From Guillardia theta CCMP2712 (taxonomy: Eukaryota; Protista; Cryptophyta), in the NCBI RefSeq assembly GCF_000315625.1, contig NW_005434603.1:264333-328332 (forward strand): a stretch of DNA of 64,000 nt, in the 5' to 3' direction. A model generated the notes under the pieces. The model worked only from the letters and a program-made list of their open reading frames with translations. It made no database searches and was not told the DNA's origin. Numbering within the stretch: the stretch's first letter is position 1; each line of letters begins with the position of its first letter. Positions 21,353-36,400 of this stretch are shown here, one piece after another. Made by a program: the position numbers and the translations under genes.

Positions 21353-21890
21353 GGCCAACAAGTTTCTGAGGGCATTGAAGTCATGCAGGGGAAAGGCAAA
21401 CGCAGCGGGGGGGGCAAAGGGGGGGCGGGGGGGAGAGAGAAGAGGAGAGGAGAGTGGTGAGAGAAGCGGAAGGGGGAGAGGCGGTGGTGGGGAGGCGTGG
21501 GGGGCATGGTCGGCAATGGACGGCTCACACGATAAGGGATGAGAATATGGTAAGGGCACAAGCAGACTGCAAAGGCCTCATATCCCTAAGGAACTCAAGT
21601 CATCATAAGAGCTTTCGGTCTCACTTGAAGTCTCAGAATCAGCAATCTCTCTCTCTCTCTTCTCTCCCTCTGCTTCCTGTACTCCATCTGAAGGCTGCAT
21701 GCTGTGTTGCGAACAGCAAGGGGGGTTGAGGGGACAGAGACAGGAACAAGAATGCCTTAAACTGGCATCAGGCCTGATATACGAGAATACGAGGCATAAC
21801 CCGAGCAAGGGTTGAGGAAGGAGGAATGGAAAGGAACAAGGTTGGGGGTAGGCTGGGGTGGATCTGGACTGGGATGCAGTAGCAGAGGGT

Positions 21891-22002
21891 GGAGGCAGCA
21901 TGGGAGCTTGCTTAGGAGCTTGCTTAGGAGGCAGCATGGGAGCTTGCTTAGGAGGCAGCATGGGAGCTTGCTTAGGAGGCAGCATAGGAGCTTGCTTAGG
22001 AG
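21891..22002. repeat. 24-bp tandem repeat (ggaggcagcatgggagcttgctta) about 4.5 copies with an internal 12-bp partial unit
   Basis: Directly visible; reads PKQAPMLP repeats on the - strand. Confidence 0.9.
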
Positions 22003-23296
22003 AATCGAGCCTGGCATCCGGTCTCGCATCTTTCGGCATCGAGCACAGCAGCGAGCACCACAATCTGCATCGAGCAGGGCGGGACAAGGTGGGCAGCAAG
22101 GTGGGGATGCACTGGGGGATGCAGGCAAAACAGGATGAGCGGGGATGAGGATCAGACTTTGTTGGGTTTCCCGGCCAGGGGGCAACAATGTTTAAAATGA
22201 ATTTATATTTACAACGATAAGTTACGACTGCCCTGAATAGCTTACAAAAATAAAAACATTTAGAAATCATGTTTCTCGTAGTCAAAATATTTTATAATTT
22301 GACTCTGATACCAGTTCTGATTTTCAAAACTACTTGTAAAATAAGAGGTACAAAGTTCTTTATACCGTTAAAACATAAAACTATATAGGAACAAAATTGC
22401 GATATGTTTCATACAGTTAATTTCATCTAAAAGACGAAATCATCGATCTTTTTAAAATACAGATTGATCCAAGTTTTAAATTTAAAAGTTCCTCATAAAG
22501 CCTGGAGTGTGGGAGTGGGGGGGCCGGGAAGGGGAGGAGGCCACAGCATTTAAAAAGAAGAGAGGAGAGATTGGACTCTCTTTTCAACACCCTACCCCCT
22601 ATCTGTCATGTAAATTGCAATAAAATATAGGGGTGGAGGTCCTTTCTTTTTGTTTCATTTCAGGCCACCGGCACGCGAGCAGAGGCCGCCGCGATGCTGA
22701 AGCGATTCCTCCTCCTGTCGGCCGCCGCCGCCGCCGCCGCCGTCTCGGTAAGGAAGACAGGAGATATGGAGGAGTAGAGATAGCGTGAAGATTGAAAGAG
22801 CTGAGAGATACGTCAAATAGCCTCTTGAGCCTTCCGATGCTAGGTTGTGCCTTGTGCCAGGACCAAAAGGCGCTAATGGTGCATACAACAAAGTGAAAGG
22901 TGGGAGGGAAGGGATAGTAGCATGAAGTGCTCTTTACGGACGACATTGAATGGCATGACTATAAGTGTTGTATGTGTGAGCTGCTGCTTAGAGAAGCTGT
23001 TGGGATGAATCACATTTTGAGTTTTTTCAACGGACTCTTCCTCCCTTTGTCTTTATACCGTATCTTTGTCTTGGCTTGTAGGAAAAAGGACGAATAGCTG
23101 TTGCATCGTTTCTTCCATCTGGCATGCCCCTCCTTCCTTTCATGCTCTGTAGTCGCTGTGCGATTTTGACCTCCATGTCGTTGCAATGTGGCTACAGCAA
23201 TGGGTAGGAATGTTGTGTTGTTCCATAGGTTTTCGGAGGGAAAGAGGAATGGAGAAGGTTTTTCAGACACATTTCTCGTCTATTTGAATATCTGTG

Positions 23297-23960
23297 ATGC
23301 AAGTTGTATTGCTGTTGTCTTGTGTTGTAGCGGAGGTCTGGGCAAAGTCATCAATTCGGCACGTGCACAACCTTACCTCGCCTCGCAATGCTGGGCGGTG
23401 CGCTGACGCTTCTCGCAGCCCTGTAACTCCAAGTCTCCTTCTCTCGCGTTCGCTGGATCTGTTCTCCCATCTATCCCACGTACCACTGCTATCTCCTCCA
23501 TCCAGTCGTCCTTCGTGGGTTCGCTGGGGTGAGGGCGGTCACTTGTTGCTGGTTGAAGAGTCACGATGCGGTGCAGGCAATCAATTGTTGCTGTCGAGGA
23601 AGCAAAGGGGGATAGCGCAACGGTGAGGATGAGCCGAACCTGAGCAAGAGGGGGTTGCTGATATGTTGCTGGTCAGAGCTTGTACATGAGCTGCCGTCGC
23701 AATTTGAAGAAGGAGAAGAGGCTTCGTAACGAGATCTGCGCTCGTCAGTACCGCAAGGTGACAGAGGAGCAAGAGCCAGAAGAGGATATGGAAGAGGCTG
23801 ATTCGTTCCCGACAGCCCAAGTCCAAGTTCAGGGGGAGCCGCCCAGGACGCAACGCGCGTGCCATGGAAGAGGATGCTGATAGCGAGTGGCTGTCTCAGA
23901 TCTACGGACAACATACCATCTATCGCCGTGACGAGAAGGCTGTTTCCTCTCCTGTGAGTT
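23297..23960 (+). CDS. Small basic protein with signal-peptide-like N-terminus (possible plastid-targeted RNA/ribosome-associated protein)
   Basis: Hydrophobic start MQVVLLLSCVVAEVWA; later exon MSCRRNLKKEKRLRNEICARQYRK followed by a donor gtgaca and a downstream exon (..AMEEDADSEWLSQIYG..). Exon joining is unverified. Confidence 0.35.
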
Positions 23961-24077
23961 GCTGAGGAAGTGGTGAAGGGTTTCTCACATGCTGGCAGGC
24001 TGAGAAGACTGGTGGAGTGGAAGCGAAGCAAGCAGTAGCTGCTTAGAGGGTTCATTGACTACTTTAGGGTTTATTCA

Positions 24078-26768
24078 TCAAGTGATCACCGAGACGAATG
24101 TTTGAAGATACTTACCACATATCATATCACTCGTCAGCTCCCCCTTGGCCACTTGTTGCTCTACCTCACTCCTCACTCTTCTCCCAATCTTTGTTTTCTG
24201 CAGAGCCGTGAGAAACTGTTTGCAGTCGGCCTCGGTCAGGAAGTAGCAGACAGTGCTTTTCCAATCGTTTGAAAACTGCACTGAAGTACTCGATGATTTC
24301 CTCGCCTGTACCTCAGAGACGGTGAACTCAGCCTTGCTCGACCCCTCGATCTTCTTGATGGTCAACCTGCCCTTGTGAAGTACCAGGGTTCCTGCCTTCT
24401 GTCCCCCGAAGACGGAGTCCGACTTGTACCTCACCGTCATGAGCAATTTGCTGTTGTAGAAGACACTCTCGGGGTCTTGGATCTTCACCTCCTGCGCGGT
24501 GAACTTTTTCAGGGCATCCTCCACCGGCTCCTCCTTGAAGAAGGAGAGGAACTCCTCGTAGTCGACGCAGCCGTTCCCGTCCCGGTCGAGCTTCTGCTCA
24601 AGTGCTTCGAGGGCGGCAGGGCTGAGGAAAGGGAACTTGTCTTTGAGGACTTGCTTCATGGTTTCGTTGCTGGCCGTCTGCTCGAACTTGCACTTCATCC
24701 AGAGTTCCTGCGCGCTCCCTGGCTTCACCGCCTTCTCCGACTCGTTGAGCGCTTGCGAGTAGACCTCATCCCATCGCTCGAGCATGGCGCCGGCATCGGC
24801 TATCCGCTTCTCAGCTGACTTCTCGAGGCAGCCAGCGGTGATGAAGTCGGAGATTGAAACCGGGATGTCGTTGAGAGGAGCCGGAGGTTCATCATACAAG
24901 GCCAATAGATAGCGGCTGACGAGGACAGGATCGGACAAGTCTTGCACAGAGACAGAGTTGCCGTTGACGAGGAAGGGAAGCTTCTTGGTGAGAGCCTCAA
25001 CGAAGATGACGCCGATGGAAAAGACGTCGCAGGCTGCTGTAAGAGCCGCTCTCTTGTGCTGCTCAGGGCTCGCGTAGACCGGAGTTCCGACAAATTCGCC
25101 GACCATGGTCGCACAGGCAGCTGACACGGCATTCACCTGCTTGGAAGTGCCGAAGTCAACCACCACCATGTCGCCGTTCTGTTTGCGCATGAGGTTGGCA
25201 GGCTTGAGGTCTCGGTGAATGATGCCGAGGCTATGGACCGCTTTCATGCCTTGCATGACCTGCCTCATGTCCTTTGACGCTTCCATCCACGTGAGAGGGC
25301 TTTTCAGCTTGTTCAGGAAGCTCTCGTAATCCTCGCCTACTACCAGATCCATGGCGATGTACAAGTGGGACTCGTGATATCCGTACCCGAGGAAGCGAAC
25401 GATATTCTTGCTCCTGATCTTCTCGAGGTTCTGTGCTTCGACCTTCCCCCGCTTGTCTTCTTGGCCGTCGCATCTCTTGAGAGCTACGATGTTCCCGTTC
25501 TTGGGGTCTCTTCCCTCGAAGACGCTCCCCATGGCTCCTTTCCCTACGGATCTTGCAAGCAGGACGAACTTCTTGTTGTTGTTCATCAAGATCTCAACCT
25601 GGGGCTCCGCAATCTCCTCCGCCTTGTCTACTGGCTTGCTCCCCGTTTCCTCTCCATCCCTAAGGGATCGGATGTGTTGAAGCTCAATCATGTACTCCTT
25701 GGCTTCCCTCTCGTCGTACTTGCAGTTCGCTACGCTTCTAATCATCGCGTTACATGTGTCTTTGTCGACCTGAACCATGCTGTTGCAGAGCGAGCTGAGC
25801 TCGTCAGCCATCTGACGTCTCAGGTTTGAGTAATATTCACGAGTCATGGGCTGGCTCAACGTGTCCGAGGAGATGTTGGAGTCTCGAACGTGCTTGATGT
25901 CCAAGAGAGTCCGGTATGCCTGGTTCTTGGTGCTCAGCAATGCATTCTCAAGCAGGAGAAAGCACAGGATGTCAAAACTCCACTCGTCCCAAGGGACAGT
26001 CTCGATCATTCTAGCTTGATCTGGTCTCAACATACCGTACAGCTCCTTGTTCTTTCGGAGTCTGGACACCATTGATTTCGCTTCTTGCTCCGACCATTGC
26101 CTCGAATTCTTCGACTGCCACACGTGCTTGAACAAGGTCTTCAAGACCGTCGGAGCCGTGGAGAGAAGTAGCTTCTGCAGTCTGAACATCCGCAACCGTC
26201 CTTCTGCGTCATTCCCGTCTGCCAGCTTAGGCGCTGTTGCCACCACCTTCAAGAGCTGAGTCTCAAGTGCTTTCCAGCTTCCGTCGGGCTGCTTCACTGC
26301 CTCCACACGGAGCAGGTATCCCTTGGCTAACTCGTTCCAGTTCCCAGAGTATGTCTCCTTGAGAACCACAACTTCTACATCTCCGCATTTGACGGTACAT
26401 GATTCTCCCTTGAGCTTGCTCGCAACTGTACCCTCAAAGACCCTATGTTCTTGCTCCTTCCATTCGAGGTTCTTGATCTCTCGCTTTGAGACGGCCTGGA
26501 GTTTGTACTCGAAACACTTGATACCAAGATCCTTTGACTGGTAGCCATGCAGCTTTAAGCACAACTTTGAAGCGTCGTCAGCGGAGCGGCAATTGATGAA
26601 GACTAGCTTCCTTTGTCTCAGAATATCATTTTGGTCGAACTTTGGAGAATCGAAGGATTCGTACAAGTCAGAAAACTTTGAGTCAAGAAAACCTTTGACT
26701 TTATCGGAGTCTGTATCGACGTCGAGGCCACAGAGCGCAACCACGCACCTGTCATTCTTCCTAGGCAT
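24078..26768 (-). CDS. Intronless 896-aa multidomain Ser/Thr kinase: RRM-like, OB-like, DZIP3-type HEPN-like, kinase, EF-hand, PH-like
   Basis: Single ORF. Kinase motifs GKGAMGSV, VALK, HRDLKPAN, DFG, GTPVYASPE, DVFSIG; EF loop DRDGNGCVDYEEF. The N-terminal and C-terminal accessory domain calls are by pattern only. Confidence 0.9.
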   Translation of the reverse strand: MPRKNDRCVVALCGLDVDTDSDKVKGFLDSKFSDLYESFDSPKFDQNDILRQRKLVFINCRSADDASKLCLKLHGYQSKDLGIKCFEYKLQAVSKREIKNLEWKEQEHRVFEGTVASKLKGESCTVKCGDVEVVVLKETYSGNWNELAKGYLLRVEAVKQPDGSWKALETQLLKVVATAPKLADGNDAEGRLRMFRLQKLLLSTAPTVLKTLFKHVWQSKNSRQWSEQEAKSMVSRLRKNKELYGMLRPDQARMIETVPWDEWSFDILCFLLLENALLSTKNQAYRTLLDIKHVRDSNISSDTLSQPMTREYYSNLRRQMADELSSLCNSMVQVDKDTCNAMIRSVANCKYDEREAKEYMIELQHIRSLRDGEETGSKPVDKAEEIAEPQVEILMNNNKKFVLLARSVGKGAMGSVFEGRDPKNGNIVALKRCDGQEDKRGKVEAQNLEKIRSKNIVRFLGYGYHESHLYIAMDLVVGEDYESFLNKLKSPLTWMEASKDMRQVMQGMKAVHSLGIIHRDLKPANLMRKQNGDMVVVDFGTSKQVNAVSAACATMVGEFVGTPVYASPEQHKRAALTAACDVFSIGVIFVEALTKKLPFLVNGNSVSVQDLSDPVLVSRYLLALYDEPPAPLNDIPVSISDFITAGCLEKSAEKRIADAGAMLERWDEVYSQALNESEKAVKPGSAQELWMKCKFEQTASNETMKQVLKDKFPFLSPAALEALEQKLDRDGNGCVDYEEFLSFFKEEPVEDALKKFTAQEVKIQDPESVFYNSKLLMTVRYKSDSVFGGQKAGTLVLHKGRLTIKKIEGSSKAEFTVSEVQARKSSSTSVQFSNDWKSTVCYFLTEADCKQFLTALQKTKIGRRVRSEVEQQVAKGELTSDMICGKYLQTFVSVIT

Positions 26769-28143: not shown

Positions 28144-28619
28144 CCGACGATCAGGCCCCTGTGCGGCAGCGGCCGTGAGCGGGCTCGAAGTCTTGACTGA
28201 GTTTTCGCCGGAAAATTCTTTTTTCGGGTACGAAGGCGTGACGTATGGCGACCCCTCGAAAGTAAAAGTACAGTACCAGTAGTAGTCGATCACAGGTACT
28301 AAACTTTACTTAAATATAACCGACGGTAGTATTTGTAAACTTCTCAAGTTTTTTTTCGGATGGCTGATATCTTGTTGATATCGTTTTCGAGTTCGGGCCC
28401 TATTGGTCCTCATCAGCCTGCGTCCTCACTCCCTCCCTCCTCCCTCCTCCCTCCTCCCTCCTCCCTCCTCCCACCTCCCTCCTCCCTCCTCCCACCTCCC
28501 TCCTTCTTCCTTCCTCCTTCCCCGGCCCACCCCCCAGAATCTCCTCCGTCATTGGCAAGGAAACCAACGAGCGAGCGGCATCCTAGCCCAGCTTCTGAGA
28601 TCTTGAAGCTCTTGACAGG

Positions 28620-33471: not shown

Positions 33472-36400
33472 CTATTCCGTCCTCACAGATGACCCTCCGA
33501 CGCTTCGGAACAGCTGCTGGAACTGCTCGAACGAGATCTTCCCTGAGTTGTTCGTGTCCACCTCCCGCACCTGCACCGGCCATGAGACAGGAACGGGCGG
33601 GTCACTTCCAGTCACCAGCTCTAGCACTTGACCCTCGGTCATCCGCACTCCCACCAGCGCAAGAGCTCGTTGAATGTCCAGAACCTGCTCGCATCCTCAG
33701 TCTCCTCCTCGTCTCCCAACACAAATGCCGCGACTACCCTTGCCTTCCTATCTCTTCCTCGCCTTACACCCCAGCCACTTCTCCTCGTCCTCGTCCTCCT
33801 CACAGCCACGTACCGAGACGGCTCCCTTCTTGCCGGTGTCGAGGTAGGCAAACGCTGCTCGAAGATCTTCTTCCGTCTCTCTGGAGGAGGCATCAGCCAT
33901 CGGACGGGAGATCCTCCCAGCGCCTCACCTCCCCTCCACGTAATGTGCCATGAGCGCCACGAAGGAGCTGAAAGGAACTCTCCCCTGTGACAAGGCGTGA
34001 GGAGGAGGAGGCATGGAGACGGTGAGGAGGAAGAGGAAGAAAAGCAGAAAGAAGGGTGAAGGGGGGGAAGAGGGTAAAGAGGGTGAGGGAGGAAATATAA
34101 GGGTTCAAAGATCATACATGATTGTCTATGCAGTTTGAGCTCAAGGCCATTCTCATCGCTTCTCTGTCGCTGACATTCTCACCCTTCACAAGGACCAGTC
34201 AATCAAGACAGCAGCGTGCAGTAGAAGCCAAGGGAAACCAGCGCTCTCATTGTCTCTCCCAGCTTCATCACGGGCAAGGAACAGTGTCCTTCGGTCTCCC
34301 TCTCACACTCTTCCAGCTTCGACCAAGTCAGAGATCCAGCTAGCTCGACAGAAACCTTTCACCTCCTCCTTCGAGTCTGCTGAAAATTGCGTGAAGACTG
34401 CCCGCATGTCCTGTTCGTAGATGAAAGTGAGAAGACCCTTCAATCCTCGATCGAGAACATGTGGAAATCGAATACCTGAATTTCACTCTCCAGCAGTTGT
34501 GTCTTCATTCCCAAAGAACCGTCAGCTATCGTTCTCTCGTAAACAATAGGACAAGACCCGATTCACTTTCCGCAGGTAATGCTGGCTGGCCACGATCCCC
34601 ACAAGACCCTGACCGAATTGTTTTCTCTGTAATTTCGAAATTTAGAGAAGAAATTTGGTGATGCGCAGAAAAGTCTTGCCTGGCGATTGAAACCTCGCAG
34701 CGCATCTAGTGACTGACTGGGCATCGGGCTGTCGGACACCCCGTTGCCTGTTCGACAACAAAAGAATTGACATAGAGCTTCAGGGCGTTCGATAGAATAC
34801 CAGCTACCCAAGGATGCTGTAAGAGCTGCTCGCAAGTGTATCGCTGATGAACATGTCAAACTCTTCTGTCGTCAGGGCAAGCATCGAACGACGCACCTGC
34901 ATCGGGTCCATGTGGATCAAATGGCGAATAACATCCTTGGCTTGCGGCGATACGTGCGCCCAGTACTCAGGATCGAACTTGTAGTCGGCCCGTAGAATCC
35001 TCTCCACCTTCACCACTTTCAATCACGAGGACCGGGGCCTGCTCGCAGTGAGCTCACGATCTGGGCGTCCGTCGATCTTCCATCTGGGTCGAAGGGATGA
35101 ACTCCAGAGAGCATGATGTAGAGGATGACTGAGAGGCCACGGTGAGCACGTCGACGACAAACAATCCCATCTTCTACCTCCCATCGACCAGAGGTCGACC
35201 GAGTAGTCGTAGGGCTGCCTTCGTAATATTTCCTGTGTCGGGAAACCAAGATTACAGGTGCATGCGCGGAGGAGATAAAGCAAGTAATATTACAGGTGCC
35301 CAGTATGCCCATGTACCACAAGATCTCTTCATCATCGTCTTCTCGCCCAGAATCTGTCAGACACCATTCACAAGGAGATCCGAACCACTGCTCTTGCACT
35401 ACCTTAGACAAGCCAAAATCAGCAATCTTAATGTCTGCTTCTGATCCTTTGGAGGTAAGAAGGAGATTTTCTGGTTTCAGATCTCGATGGCAAATTTTGC
35501 GTCTGCATGACCATCAACAACACGGAGATGGCTCGAAGACAAGTATCACTCGTGTAAATGCATCAAAGCATCCGTAATCTTTCTTATCCTGCCGAAATGA
35601 TACACATGAGACCAAATTCGAATCAAATTCCCTGTTGAAACCACTTACATCTTAGCAGCGTCCTTCTCACTAAAAGCCCCGTCATTTACAATTCTATCAA
35701 ACAATTCTCCACCCTTGCAAGGAGTCACAACTGCAATTCAGCAGGATTCACATCGGCATACCTGCACCAACTCGAGTACTAAATACACAGACTTCTCGTC
35801 TTCAAAGACATCCTGCGCAGGAGGAATCATCTTTCATGCAGCAGCCCTGCACGTTGCGTACCTTCAATGAGATGACGTTCGGGTGAGAAACCTGAAGGAT
35901 AGGTGAGTGATGGACCAAACAGCAAGGCAATGACCGTGGTCAGGATCTCAATCTCTCTAGCCAATTGACGACGTCGCATGTTTGCCTGCGGCAATCAAAA
36001 TTTACTTCTCTCCCTCTTCAGCCTTCAGATGCTCCAACCTTATCTACACACTTCACAGCCACGAGCTCCTTGGTTTGCTTGTTCCTTGCCTTCTTAACAA
36101 CAGCATGAACACCACTTCCTAACACCTGTTTGATAAGAAGTGTCACGTTGTACTATGATACATGAACATTTTGATATACCTCTAAAACTTCATAGTAATC
36201 GTTAATATTCCTGTGATCCTCCGCCAATGGTCCTTCCTGCCCCATCAACGTTCAATGCCAACAGCTTGAGTAGCAGCATTAAAGAACATTACATCTTTCT
36301 TGTCGTACGTGCCTGGGGAAACAGAATCGTTAGAAATAGGGAACAACCAGCGACAAAATCCAACCATTCTTCTTTAGCTTCCCACCAAGATTCCAGCTTT

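What the first reader, a model, noticed from the sequence alone, without database searches (positions are those of the whole stretch)
24078..26768. Intronless RRM-OB-HEPN-kinase-EF-hand-PH protein: candidate RNA-sensing/immune signalling system
Seen: a 2.7-kb uninterrupted ORF in a genome where nearly every neighbouring gene has many introns, with intact kinase motifs and an EF-hand. Pattern-based calls: aa 7-92 RRM-like (VVALCGL..KLVFINC..DDASKLCLKLHGY), aa 108-175 OB/cold-shock-like (FEGTV..GYLLRVEAVKQPDGSWKA), aa 190-330 resembling the DZIP3/hRUL138 HEPN (RLQKLLL..LKTLFKHVW..W..FDILCFLLL..DIKHVRD), and a PH-like C-terminus. Known: kinase+HEPN pairing underlies RNase L and IRE1, and DZIP3-type HEPNs recur in eukaryotic conflict/immune proteins. 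Inference: an RNA- and Ca2+-responsive kinase with an architecture I do not recognise as described, possibly antiviral.
Basis: partly seen in the sequence, partly recalled or inferred. Interest (0 to 1): 0.85.

Follow-up and report, generated by a model that had tools for sequence, protein, structure and literature searches.

The report
Cryptophyte multidomain kinase with degenerate HEPN
An almost unannotated ~860-residue protein of the alga Guillardia theta joins two RNA-binding-type folds, a HEPN-like domain without its RNase histidine, an intact protein kinase, a calcium-binding EF-hand and a PH-like domain. It belongs to a small family whose identifiable members are all cryptophyte algae, and the other members keep the RNase motif, so the family may be a kinase-HEPN pairing independent of IRE1 and RNase L.

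Summary
The 896-codon minus-strand ORF at 24078-26768 is real and sits in intron-rich Guillardia theta nuclear DNA (not human). The public gene model covers only aa 395-600. AlphaFold2 models and Foldseek give an RRM-like fold (aa 7-100), an S1-like OB barrel (106-176), an all-helical domain (187-350), an intact Ser/Thr kinase (404-660), an EF-hand pair with one canonical loop (728-739) and a PH-like domain (770-860).

The family is small and every named member is a cryptophyte. Seven longer relatives carry a conserved R-N-x-[FL]-x-H HEPN motif and give sub-threshold Pfam hits to four HEPN families, most often HEPN_DZIP3. The window protein and its Hanusia ortholog read R-D-S-N-I-S at those columns, so His and Asn are lost. 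Their HEPN region has also diverged far more than their other domains.

This copy is therefore most likely a kinase with a catalytically dead HEPN, not an RNase L or IRE1 analogue. RNA sensing, calcium control and any antiviral role are inference. The last 36 codons are a frameshifted tail: the conserved ending WEKSEE-stop lies in the adjacent frame.

I rate it a new variant of a known kind, of moderate interest.

The parts
24078..26768 (-). Whole uninterrupted ORF, 896 codons plus stop. The conserved protein is aa 1-860.
26469..26750 (-). aa 7-100: RRM-like (ferredoxin-like beta-alpha-beta-beta-alpha-beta) domain. It is non-canonical: of the RNP aromatic residues only F57 is kept.
   Evidence: AF2 pLDDT is about 90-97 here. 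Foldseek matches are Pes4 RRM3 (TMt 0.70), eIF3g RRM (0.64), Rna15 RRM (0.60) and eIF3b RRM (0.55). The family profile hits the RBM5 and eIF3b RRMs at E about 1. One family member hits Pfam RRM_1 at E 0.011.
26241..26453 (-). aa 106-176: five-stranded OB-fold barrel, S1-like.
   Evidence: Strands at 108-119, 123-128, 131-136, 152-159 and 165-174. Foldseek matches are the DBC1 S1-like domain 8ez6 (TMt 0.76, rmsd 2.7), the LysRS and AspRS anticodon-binding OB domains, and Ten1. In the viral library the matches are S1, CSD, eIF1A and eIF2alpha proteins.
25719..26210 (-). aa 187-350: all-helical HEPN-like domain, homologous to the Rx4H-bearing domain of the long-form relatives but catalytically degenerate.
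   Evidence: Helices at 188-221, 227-244, 249-257, 265-274, 283-298, 310-328 and 333-347, with pLDDT mostly above 90. The alignment with the long forms is colinear. Of nine family HEPN pieces, six hit Pfam HEPN_DZIP3, three HEPN_RiboL-PSP, one HEPN_Swt1 and one HEPN_Apea, all below threshold. The window piece itself hits none.
25869..25886 (-). aa 295-300, R-D-S-N-I-S: the position of the HEPN Rx4H motif. Arg is kept, Asn is replaced by Asp, and His by Ser.
   Evidence: All seven long forms have R-N-x-[FL]-x-H at these columns. Hanusia has the same R-D-S-N-I-S. The motif lies at the end of helix 283-298 and the start of the loop to helix 310-328, which is where the HEPN survey places Rx4-6H.
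25560..25718 (-). aa 351-403: helical then disordered linker. It is shorter than the 77-109 residue linker, probably a coiled coil, of the long forms.
24789..25559 (-). aa 404-660: Ser/Thr protein kinase domain with all catalytic motifs.
24741..24794 (-). aa 659-676: helix after the kinase. Pairwise alignments with CaMKI extend into this region, so it may be a regulatory segment.
   Evidence: The CaMK1 alignments run to query aa 699-700. The helix is H2-19 of the C-terminal model, and its pLDDT is low, about 50.
24534..24713 (-). aa 686-745: EF-hand pair. The second loop, DRDGNGCVDYEE at aa 728-739 (nt 24552-24587), is canonical.
24189..24461 (-). aa 770-860: PH-like domain of seven strands and a C-terminal helix.
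   Evidence: Foldseek matches are ASAP1 PH 5c79 (E 1.5e-5, TMt 0.75), and the FAPP1, CERT and ARAP3 PH domains (TMt 0.71-0.75).
24081..24188 (-). aa 861-896: non-homologous tail produced by a one-base shift relative to the Hanusia reading.
24166..24186 (-). The adjacent frame encodes WEKSEE-stop, identical to the C-terminus of the Hanusia ortholog. This is the ancestral end of the gene.

Best explanation
This is a Guillardia theta nuclear gene for a lineage-specific signalling Ser/Thr kinase. The order of domains is: RRM-like, S1-like OB, HEPN-like (dead), short helical linker, active kinase, EF-hand pair, PH-like.

Shown by computation: the folds, the intact kinase motifs, the canonical calcium loop, the cryptophyte identity of every named family member, the loss of the HEPN His and Asn in the Guillardia and Hanusia copies, and the disproportionate divergence of that domain.

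Inferred: the N-terminal module still acts as a ligand-binding and dimerising unit. The ligand is most likely RNA, and a dead HEPN would serve as a binding or dimerisation domain in the way the HEPN survey proposes for inactive versions. Bringing two kinase domains together would allow trans-autophosphorylation, as in PKR, IRE1 and RNase L. The helix after the kinase together with the EF-hand pair would add calcium control of CaMK/CDPK type. The PH-like domain would set localisation or partner binding.

The long-form relatives in other cryptophytes have an intact R-N-x-F-x-H motif, an extra weakly LOTUS-like insert and a longer linker, probably a coiled coil. They are predicted to be kinase plus RNase enzymes. 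The Guillardia/Hanusia form is a derivative that kept the kinase output and lost the RNase.
For: The ORF and its conservation: the Hanusia phi transcript-derived ortholog is 73% identical and colinear over 860 aa.

Folds:
- The N-terminal AF2 model has pLDDT 83.8, and its Foldseek matches are RRM and OB/S1 structures.
- The C-terminal model has pLDDT 77.4, and its matches are PH domains at E 1.5e-5.

Kinase motifs are intact. The EF loop is canonical.

HEPN:
- All seven long forms have R-N-x-[FL]-x-H where the window and Hanusia have R-D-S-N-I-S.
- Pfam HEPN_DZIP3 is the most frequent hit, 6 of 9 pieces with best E 1.3e-3, and three other HEPN families also appear.
- The motif sits at the end of one helix and the start of the loop to the next, as described for HEPN.

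Relaxed or changed constraint on the HEPN region:
- Window against long forms: 18-22% identity in the HEPN region, 31-41% in RRM+OB, 36-42% in the kinase.
- Long forms against each other: 37-63% in the HEPN region.
- Guillardia against Hanusia: still 67% in the HEPN region, so the dead domain is maintained.

CaMKI alignments extend past the kinase to aa 700.

The composition is native: GC3 is 0.70, between the values of two neighbouring genes.
Against: - No experiment and no G. theta transcript evidence was available.
- The window's own HEPN-like segment gives no Pfam HEPN hit.
- The Foldseek output for the three-domain model was filled by OB and RRM matches, so the HEPN fold was not tested structurally.
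- The RRM lacks two of the three RNP aromatic residues. Its closest structural match by E-value, the eIF3b RRM, is to my knowledge a protein-binding RRM, so RNA binding is not assured.
- OB and PH folds are functionally promiscuous.
- Only one EF loop is canonical, and the helix after the kinase is modelled with low confidence.
- The 3' frameshift might indicate decay or an assembly error.
Confidence: 0.45

Rival explanations
1. It is a calcium-regulated kinase of CDPK/CaMK type. Its N-terminal RRM-like, OB and helical domains are protein-protein interaction or scaffold modules with no RNA connection. The HEPN ancestry is historical only.
For: The RNP aromatic residues are mostly missing. The HEPN catalytic residues are lost. 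The best PDB kinase matches include CaMKI, aligned through its regulatory segment. The EF loop is canonical. PH-like domains often mediate protein or lipid binding.
Against: RRM-like, S1-like OB, a weakly LOTUS-like insert in the relatives and HEPN occur together in one family. That is a coherent set of RNA-associated domains. OST-HTH plus S1 modules and RRM or HEPN combinations are described in conflict systems.
Confidence: 0.3
2. This copy is a true dual kinase and RNase like IRE1 and RNase L. The HEPN-like domain would cleave RNA using alternative residues despite the loss of the canonical His.
For: Arg295 is retained. The HEPN survey notes families that use alternative active-site residues. 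The domain is still 67% identical between Guillardia and Hanusia.
Against: Both the His and the Asn of the R-N-x-x-x-H motif are replaced. The region is only 18-22% identical to the long forms although the flanking domains are 31-42% identical. There is no HEPN Pfam signal at all. The domain order and HEPN family differ from KEN.
Confidence: 0.1
3. It is a decaying or misassembled gene, in effect a pseudogene, rather than a functional protein.
For: There is a one-base shift before the conserved WEKSEE-stop ending. The public annotation models only 206 aa. The exact protein is absent from the protein collection.
Against: Eight hundred and sixty codons are open and colinear with a transcribed ortholog at 73% identity. 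All kinase motifs are intact. The shift only replaces the last 7 residues with a 36-residue tail.
Confidence: 0.05
4. The gene is intronless because it was acquired recently from a virus or bacterium, or by retroposition, rather than being an old cryptophyte gene.
For: It is a single exon in an intron-rich region. The nearest kinase matches outside the family are bacterial Hanks-type kinases.
Against: - GC and GC3 match the neighbouring genes.
- The family is present in Hanusia, Rhodomonas, Hemiselmis, Baffinella and environmental cryptophyte-like contigs.
- The family forms one clade with 100/99 support.
- Two scans of viral contigs found no relative, though single-protein queries reach only close relatives.
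- Some environmental homologs appear to be interrupted, since their ORF fragments run into junk. This is consistent with introns in other species.
Confidence: 0.05

Closest known systems
IRE1 / RNase L (kinase or pseudokinase fused to a KEN-type HEPN RNase)
   Same: A protein kinase domain and a HEPN-superfamily domain lie in one polypeptide. For the long-form relatives, the predicted logic is that dimerisation couples the kinase to the RNase.
   Different: Here the HEPN domain is N-terminal to the kinase and separated from it by a linker. It resembles the DZIP3 type, not KEN. There are no ankyrin or lumenal sensor domains. In the window protein the catalytic His and Asn are lost. The fusion is most simply explained as independent.
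DZIP3/hRUL138-like HEPN proteins (Pfam PF18738) of animal immune-type expansions
   Same: This is the Pfam family most often hit by the family's HEPN region. The matches cover the R-N-x-x-x-H stretch, at profile positions about 71-141 of 144.
   Different: All scores are below the gathering threshold (at most 19 bits against 27). The known fusions are TPR, RING, ankyrin, CARD, NACHT, Death and LRR, mainly in animals and Capsaspora. Neither a kinase fusion nor cryptophytes are listed.
PKR-type sensor kinases (RNA-binding domains upstream of a dimerisation-activated kinase)
   Same: Nucleic-acid-binding-type folds lie N-terminal to an active Ser/Thr kinase. Ligand-induced dimerisation is the proposed activation route. 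This comparison rests on my own knowledge.
   Different: The binding folds are different: RRM-like, OB and HEPN here against dsRBMs in PKR. There is no sequence relationship beyond the kinase superfamily, and RNA binding is untested here.
CaMKI / CDPK (kinase followed by a regulatory helix and calcium-sensing elements)
   Same: CaMKI aligns through its regulatory segment. EF-hands follow the kinase, as in CDPKs.
   Different: There is one EF-hand pair with a single canonical loop, not a four-EF calmodulin-like domain. The large N-terminal module and the C-terminal PH-like domain are extra.
GRK2-type kinase plus C-terminal PH domain
   Same: Foldseek aligns the C-terminal model to the GRK2 PH region and to lipid-binding PH domains.
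   Different: There is no RGS-homology domain, the kinase is not of the AGC family, and a phosphoinositide-binding motif was not assessed.

Membership tests
Eukaryotic-type protein kinase superfamily (Pfam PF00069) | Profile match above the curated cut-off | tested here: met
   167.6 bits against a cut-off of 31.7, aa 406-657
Eukaryotic-type protein kinase superfamily (Pfam PF00069) | Catalytic motifs: Gly-loop, VAIK Lys, HRD, DFG, APE | tested here: met
   GKGAMG at 409, VALK at 428, HRDLKPAN at 518, DFG at 538, SPE at 567
EF-hand | Canonical 12-residue calcium loop, D-x-D-x-N-G-x-V-x-x-x-E | tested here: met
   DRDGNGCVDYEE at aa 728-739. The model shows two helix-loop-helix units with paired short strands.
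EF-hand | Pfam EF-hand profile above the curated cut-off | tested here: not met
   The window piece scores 23.0 bits against 25.4. The Hanusia ortholog passes, with EF-hand_1 at 25.9 and EF-hand_7 at 30.1 against 30.
RRM (RNA recognition motif) | beta-alpha-beta-beta-alpha-beta fold that superposes on RRM structures | tested here: met
   Secondary structure. Foldseek TMt values are 0.55-0.70 to the eIF3b, Rna15, eIF3g and Pes4 RRMs.
RRM (RNA recognition motif) | RNP1 and RNP2 consensus with three exposed aromatic residues | tested here: not met
   beta1 reads VVALCGL, with no aromatic residue. beta3 reads RKLVFINC, where only F57 is aromatic. The comparison with the RNP consensus rests on my own knowledge.
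RRM (RNA recognition motif) | Pfam RRM_1 match | tested here: not met
   No hit for the window protein. One relative hits at E 0.011.
OB-fold (S1-like or anticodon-binding type) | Five-stranded barrel that superposes on OB structures | tested here: met
   Five strands in aa 108-174. Matches are the DBC1 S1-like domain (TMt 0.76), the LysRS and AspRS N-domains and Ten1, and viral S1, CSD and eIF1A proteins.
HEPN superfamily | Rx4-6H catalytic motif at the end of helix 3 | tested here: not met
   The window and Hanusia proteins read R-D-S-N-I-S. The motif is present as R-N-x-[FL]-x-H in all seven long-form relatives.
HEPN superfamily | Four-helix up-down core shown by structural superposition | tested here: inconclusive
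   The domain is all helical with high pLDDT, and the motif is placed as expected.
HEPN_DZIP3 (Pfam PF18738) | Profile match above the gathering score of 27 bits | tested here: not met
   The window protein gives no hit. Six of nine family pieces hit, the best at E 1.3e-3 and 19 bits. The best E-value in the longer pieces is 6.8e-4.
IRE1 / RNase L family | KEN domain immediately C-terminal to the kinase or pseudokinase | tested here: not met
   The region C-terminal to the kinase is an EF-hand pair and a PH-like domain. The HEPN-like domain is N-terminal.
PH-like fold | Seven-stranded sandwich capped by a C-terminal helix that superposes on PH domains | tested here: met
   ASAP1 PH at E 1.5e-5 and TMt 0.75, with FAPP1, CERT and ARAP3 at TMt 0.71-0.75
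PH-like fold | Basic phosphoinositide-binding motif in the beta1-beta2 loop | not tested
   I looked at it by eye only, and no clear motif was apparent.
CDPK | Calmodulin-like domain with four EF-hands after a junction segment | tested here: not met
   There is only one EF pair, with one canonical loop.

The most novel reading that the evidence does not exclude
Cryptophytes have their own kinase-HEPN RNA surveillance or antiviral system, which arose independently of IRE1 and RNase L. In the long forms, RRM-like, S1-like and LOTUS-like domains would sense RNA and drive dimerisation of a DZIP3-like HEPN RNase and an active kinase, under calcium control. The Guillardia/Hanusia protein in this window would be a naturally RNase-dead derivative that either signals by phosphorylation only or acts as a regulator or decoy of the pathway.
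Probability: 0.2. Interest if true: 0.8.

Novelty: new variant of a known kind. Interest (0 to 1): 0.58.

Why it matters
Kinase-HEPN coupling is the core of two important eukaryotic stress and immunity enzymes, IRE1 and RNase L. This family would be an independent fusion: a different HEPN family, the opposite domain order, RNA-binding-type folds and a calcium sensor, in a secondary-plastid alga with almost no described innate-immunity machinery. It would give a natural comparison for how HEPN RNases are wired to kinases.

The family also offers a ready-made active-versus-dead contrast, because the long forms keep R-N-x-F-x-H and Guillardia and Hanusia do not.

There is a practical point too. 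The public G. theta model shows only 206 of about 866 residues, so the architecture cannot be found by searching annotated proteomes.

Tried and rejected
- Pfam scans of the whole window protein and of its pieces found no RRM, OB, HEPN or PH family, even at E up to 10.
- A profile search of the PDB with the N-terminal alignment gave only E about 1 hits to RRMs. With the HEPN alignment it gave only a spurious hit to a BRIL fusion protein.
- A word-indexed homolog search with the HEPN-only alignment found nothing. Its length window of 93-296 aa excludes multidomain proteins.
- Foldseek of the N-terminal model against the PDB and BFVD never showed the helical domain among the 50 rows listed.
- PADLOC gave nothing meaningful.
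- The metagenome scan with the window N-terminus found no relative.
- Two viral-contig scans found no relative.
- tblastn of the protein and of a long form against the window found no paralog. It found only a short HRD-motif match to an unrelated kinase gene near 35.4 kb.
- The supplement of the HEPN paper held no DZIP3 alignment to compare with.
- I rejected the reading 'housekeeping kinase', because the N-terminal module has only 18 relatives among 1.84 billion cluster representatives, and every named one is a cryptophyte.
- I rejected 'human': the locus matches assembly GCA_000315625.1, which to my knowledge is Guillardia theta CCMP2712.
Full report
**Source of the window.**
A 206-aa public protein (P0021) is 100% identical to aa 395-600 of the ORF. 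It lies on scaffold JH993035.1 of assembly GCA_000315625.1. To my knowledge that assembly is Guillardia theta CCMP2712, although the tool did not print an organism name. The neighbouring genes of that locus map onto the window in the expected order: FMN-dependent dehydrogenase, threonine synthase and aldose epimerase.

**The observation.**
- The ORF at 24078-26768 on the minus strand is 896 codons long. The chance of that many open codons at this composition is about 5e-17. It is the longest ORF in the window by far.
- In the public gene calls, four of five complete neighbours span 36-65% more DNA than they encode. The intron-rich context is real.
- The public model for this gene is only the kinase core, and the full protein is absent from the 15-billion-sequence collection.
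- A transcript-derived protein of the sister genus Hanusia phi (P0001, 871 aa) is 73% identical and colinear from M1 to K860. This supports a single-exon coding region with the N-terminus as read.
- A 1053-aa relative from Tara Oceans metagenomes is also one uninterrupted ORF on genomic contigs of up to 30 kb, among fragmented neighbouring genes.
- Some environmental homologs look interrupted.

**Domains.**
- Pfam finds a kinase (E 4.8e-49) and a near-threshold EF-hand.
- All kinase motifs are present, and the EF loop at 728-739 is canonical.
- An AlphaFold2 model of aa 1-400, built on a 21-sequence family alignment, has mean pLDDT 83.8. It shows a beta-alpha-beta-beta-alpha-beta unit at 9-94, a five-stranded barrel at 108-174 and an all-helical domain at 188-372.
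- Foldseek against the PDB returns two kinds of match. One kind is RRM structures: Pes4 RRM3 (TMt 0.70), eIF3g (0.64), Rna15 (0.60) and eIF3b (0.55). The other is OB folds: the DBC1 S1-like domain (TMt 0.76), the LysRS and AspRS anticodon-binding domains, and Ten1.
- The viral structure library gives S1, CSD, eIF1A and RRM proteins.
- The RRM is non-canonical. Only one of the three RNP aromatic residues is kept.
- The C-terminal model has pLDDT 77.4. It shows an EF-hand pair and then seven strands and a helix. These match PH domains: ASAP1 at E 1.5e-5 and TMt 0.75, and also FAPP1, CERT and the GRK2 PH region.

**The HEPN question.**
- The window's helical domain gives no Pfam hit.
- An exhaustive phmmer search with aa 1-400 against 1.84 billion cluster representatives found 18 relatives.
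- Those with names are all cryptophytes: Rhodomonas abbreviata, R. salina, Hemiselmis rufescens and Baffinella frigidus, besides Hanusia.
- The full-length relatives (1053-1079 aa) have the same domain order as the window protein. They also have an extra insert of about 95 residues after the OB domain and a longer linker.
- At the columns where the window and Hanusia read V-R-D-S-N-I-S, all seven long forms read R-N-x-[FL]-x-H. That is the HEPN Rx4H signature.
- When the nine HEPN pieces are scanned one by one, six hit HEPN_DZIP3 (best E 1.3e-3), three hit HEPN_RiboL-PSP, one hits HEPN_Swt1 and one hits HEPN_Apea. All are below the curated cut-offs, and the window and Hanusia pieces hit none.
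- In the model the motif position lies at the end of helix 283-298 and the start of the loop to helix 310-328. The HEPN survey places Rx4-6H there.
- I therefore accept HEPN ancestry for the domain as probable.
- Membership of PF18738 is unproven. The structural test is inconclusive, because the prediction cap left no job for the isolated domain.

**Degeneration of the HEPN domain in this copy.**

| Comparison | HEPN region | RRM+OB | Kinase |
|---|---|---|---|
| Window vs long forms | 18-22% | 31-41% | 36-42% |
| Long forms vs each other | 37-63% | not summarised | about 39-64% |
| Guillardia vs Hanusia | 67% | not summarised | not summarised |

- The domain lost its catalytic residues and drifted, but it is still maintained.
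- The gene tree places Guillardia plus Hanusia on a long stem (0.9) as sister to all long forms, with 94/92 support.
- My understanding of cryptophyte relationships would place Hemiselmis outside this group, so the tree conflicts with it. The cause could be acceleration or an old duplication, and I could not decide between them.

**Mechanism.**
- Firmly supported: this is an active-looking Ser/Thr kinase with a calcium-binding loop, flanked by nucleic-acid-binding-type folds and a PH-like domain.
- Inferred: the N-terminal module binds a ligand, most likely RNA, and dimerises, and this activates the kinase in trans.
- Inferred: the helix after the kinase and the EF pair add calcium control. 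CaMKI alignments extend to aa 700.
- Inferred: the PH-like domain localises the protein.
- The HEPN survey proposes that HEPN domains without the motif act as binding domains.
- The RNase L / IRE1 analogy fits the long forms better than this protein. Even there the fusion differs in domain order and in HEPN family.
- The survey lists no kinase fusion and no cryptophyte for the DZIP3 type. Literature searches found no description of such a protein.

**The 3' end.**
- After K860 the ORF continues for 36 codons that no relative shares.
- The adjacent frame, starting one base before the ORF's next codon, reads WEKSEE-stop. That is identical to the Hanusia C-terminus D-W-E-K-S-E-E.
- The assembly is therefore one base short in the Asp codon.
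- I cannot say whether this is a true deletion or an assembly error.

**Foreign origin.**
This is unlikely. GC and GC3 are native, the family spans several cryptophyte genera, and two viral-contig scans found nothing.

**Verdict.**
- The architectural reading is largely right, and the architecture is apparently undescribed.
- The functional reading is only partly supported. This copy is best seen as the RNase-dead member of a kinase-HEPN family so far seen only in cryptophytes.
- I rate it a new variant of a known kind, with interest 0.58.

Noticed in passing
window 24081-24188 and 24166-24186 (minus strand): A one-base shift after K860 gives a 36-codon tail that no relative shares. The adjacent frame encodes WEKSEE-stop, identical to the Hanusia C-terminus. 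It may be a real deletion or an assembly error.
   Followed up: yes
window 24969-25586 (aa 395-600 of the ORF): The public gene model for this locus (P0021, 206 aa) covers only the kinase core. The full architecture is therefore invisible in annotated proteomes, and the exact 896-aa protein is absent from the protein collection.
   Followed up: yes
long-form relatives, e.g. P0003 residues 208-300 (no counterpart in the window): An insert of about 95 residues lies between the OB and HEPN domains, with the conserved pattern GKGW.SL..IG.WF...KHKQLKNFVA. It hits Pfam OST-HTH/LOTUS weakly: 3 of 8 members, best E 0.052. It is absent from Guillardia and Hanusia.
   Followed up: partly
gene tree of the family: Guillardia plus Hanusia sit on a long stem as sister to all long forms, including Hemiselmis. 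This is not what I would expect from the species tree. It could be accelerated evolution or an ancient paralogy.
   Followed up: partly
L001-L004 (Tara and ENA metagenome contigs): The 1053-aa long-form homolog is a single uninterrupted ORF on genomic contigs of up to 30 kb, next to fragmented genes (Pro_isomerase, and a kinase split into two pieces). The single-exon state is therefore shared by at least one other cryptophyte-like genome. Several short environmental fragments (P0008, P0013, P0015) end in junk, as if they run into introns.
   Followed up: partly
window about 35397-35495 (minus strand): This is an unrelated protein kinase gene. Only the HRD-region matches, and it is annotated as Pkinase in the public calls. 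It is not a paralog of the target.
   Followed up: partly
window 21800-22150 and 28400-28560: These are short tandem peptide-like repeats in non-coding or low-complexity DNA. ORF translations show PKQAPML repeated and SSLLPPP repeated.
   Followed up: no
window 22694-24046 (plus strand): A publicly annotated 158-aa gene with introns converges on the target gene. It ends only about 30 bases from the target's stop codon, so the 3' UTRs probably overlap.
   Followed up: no
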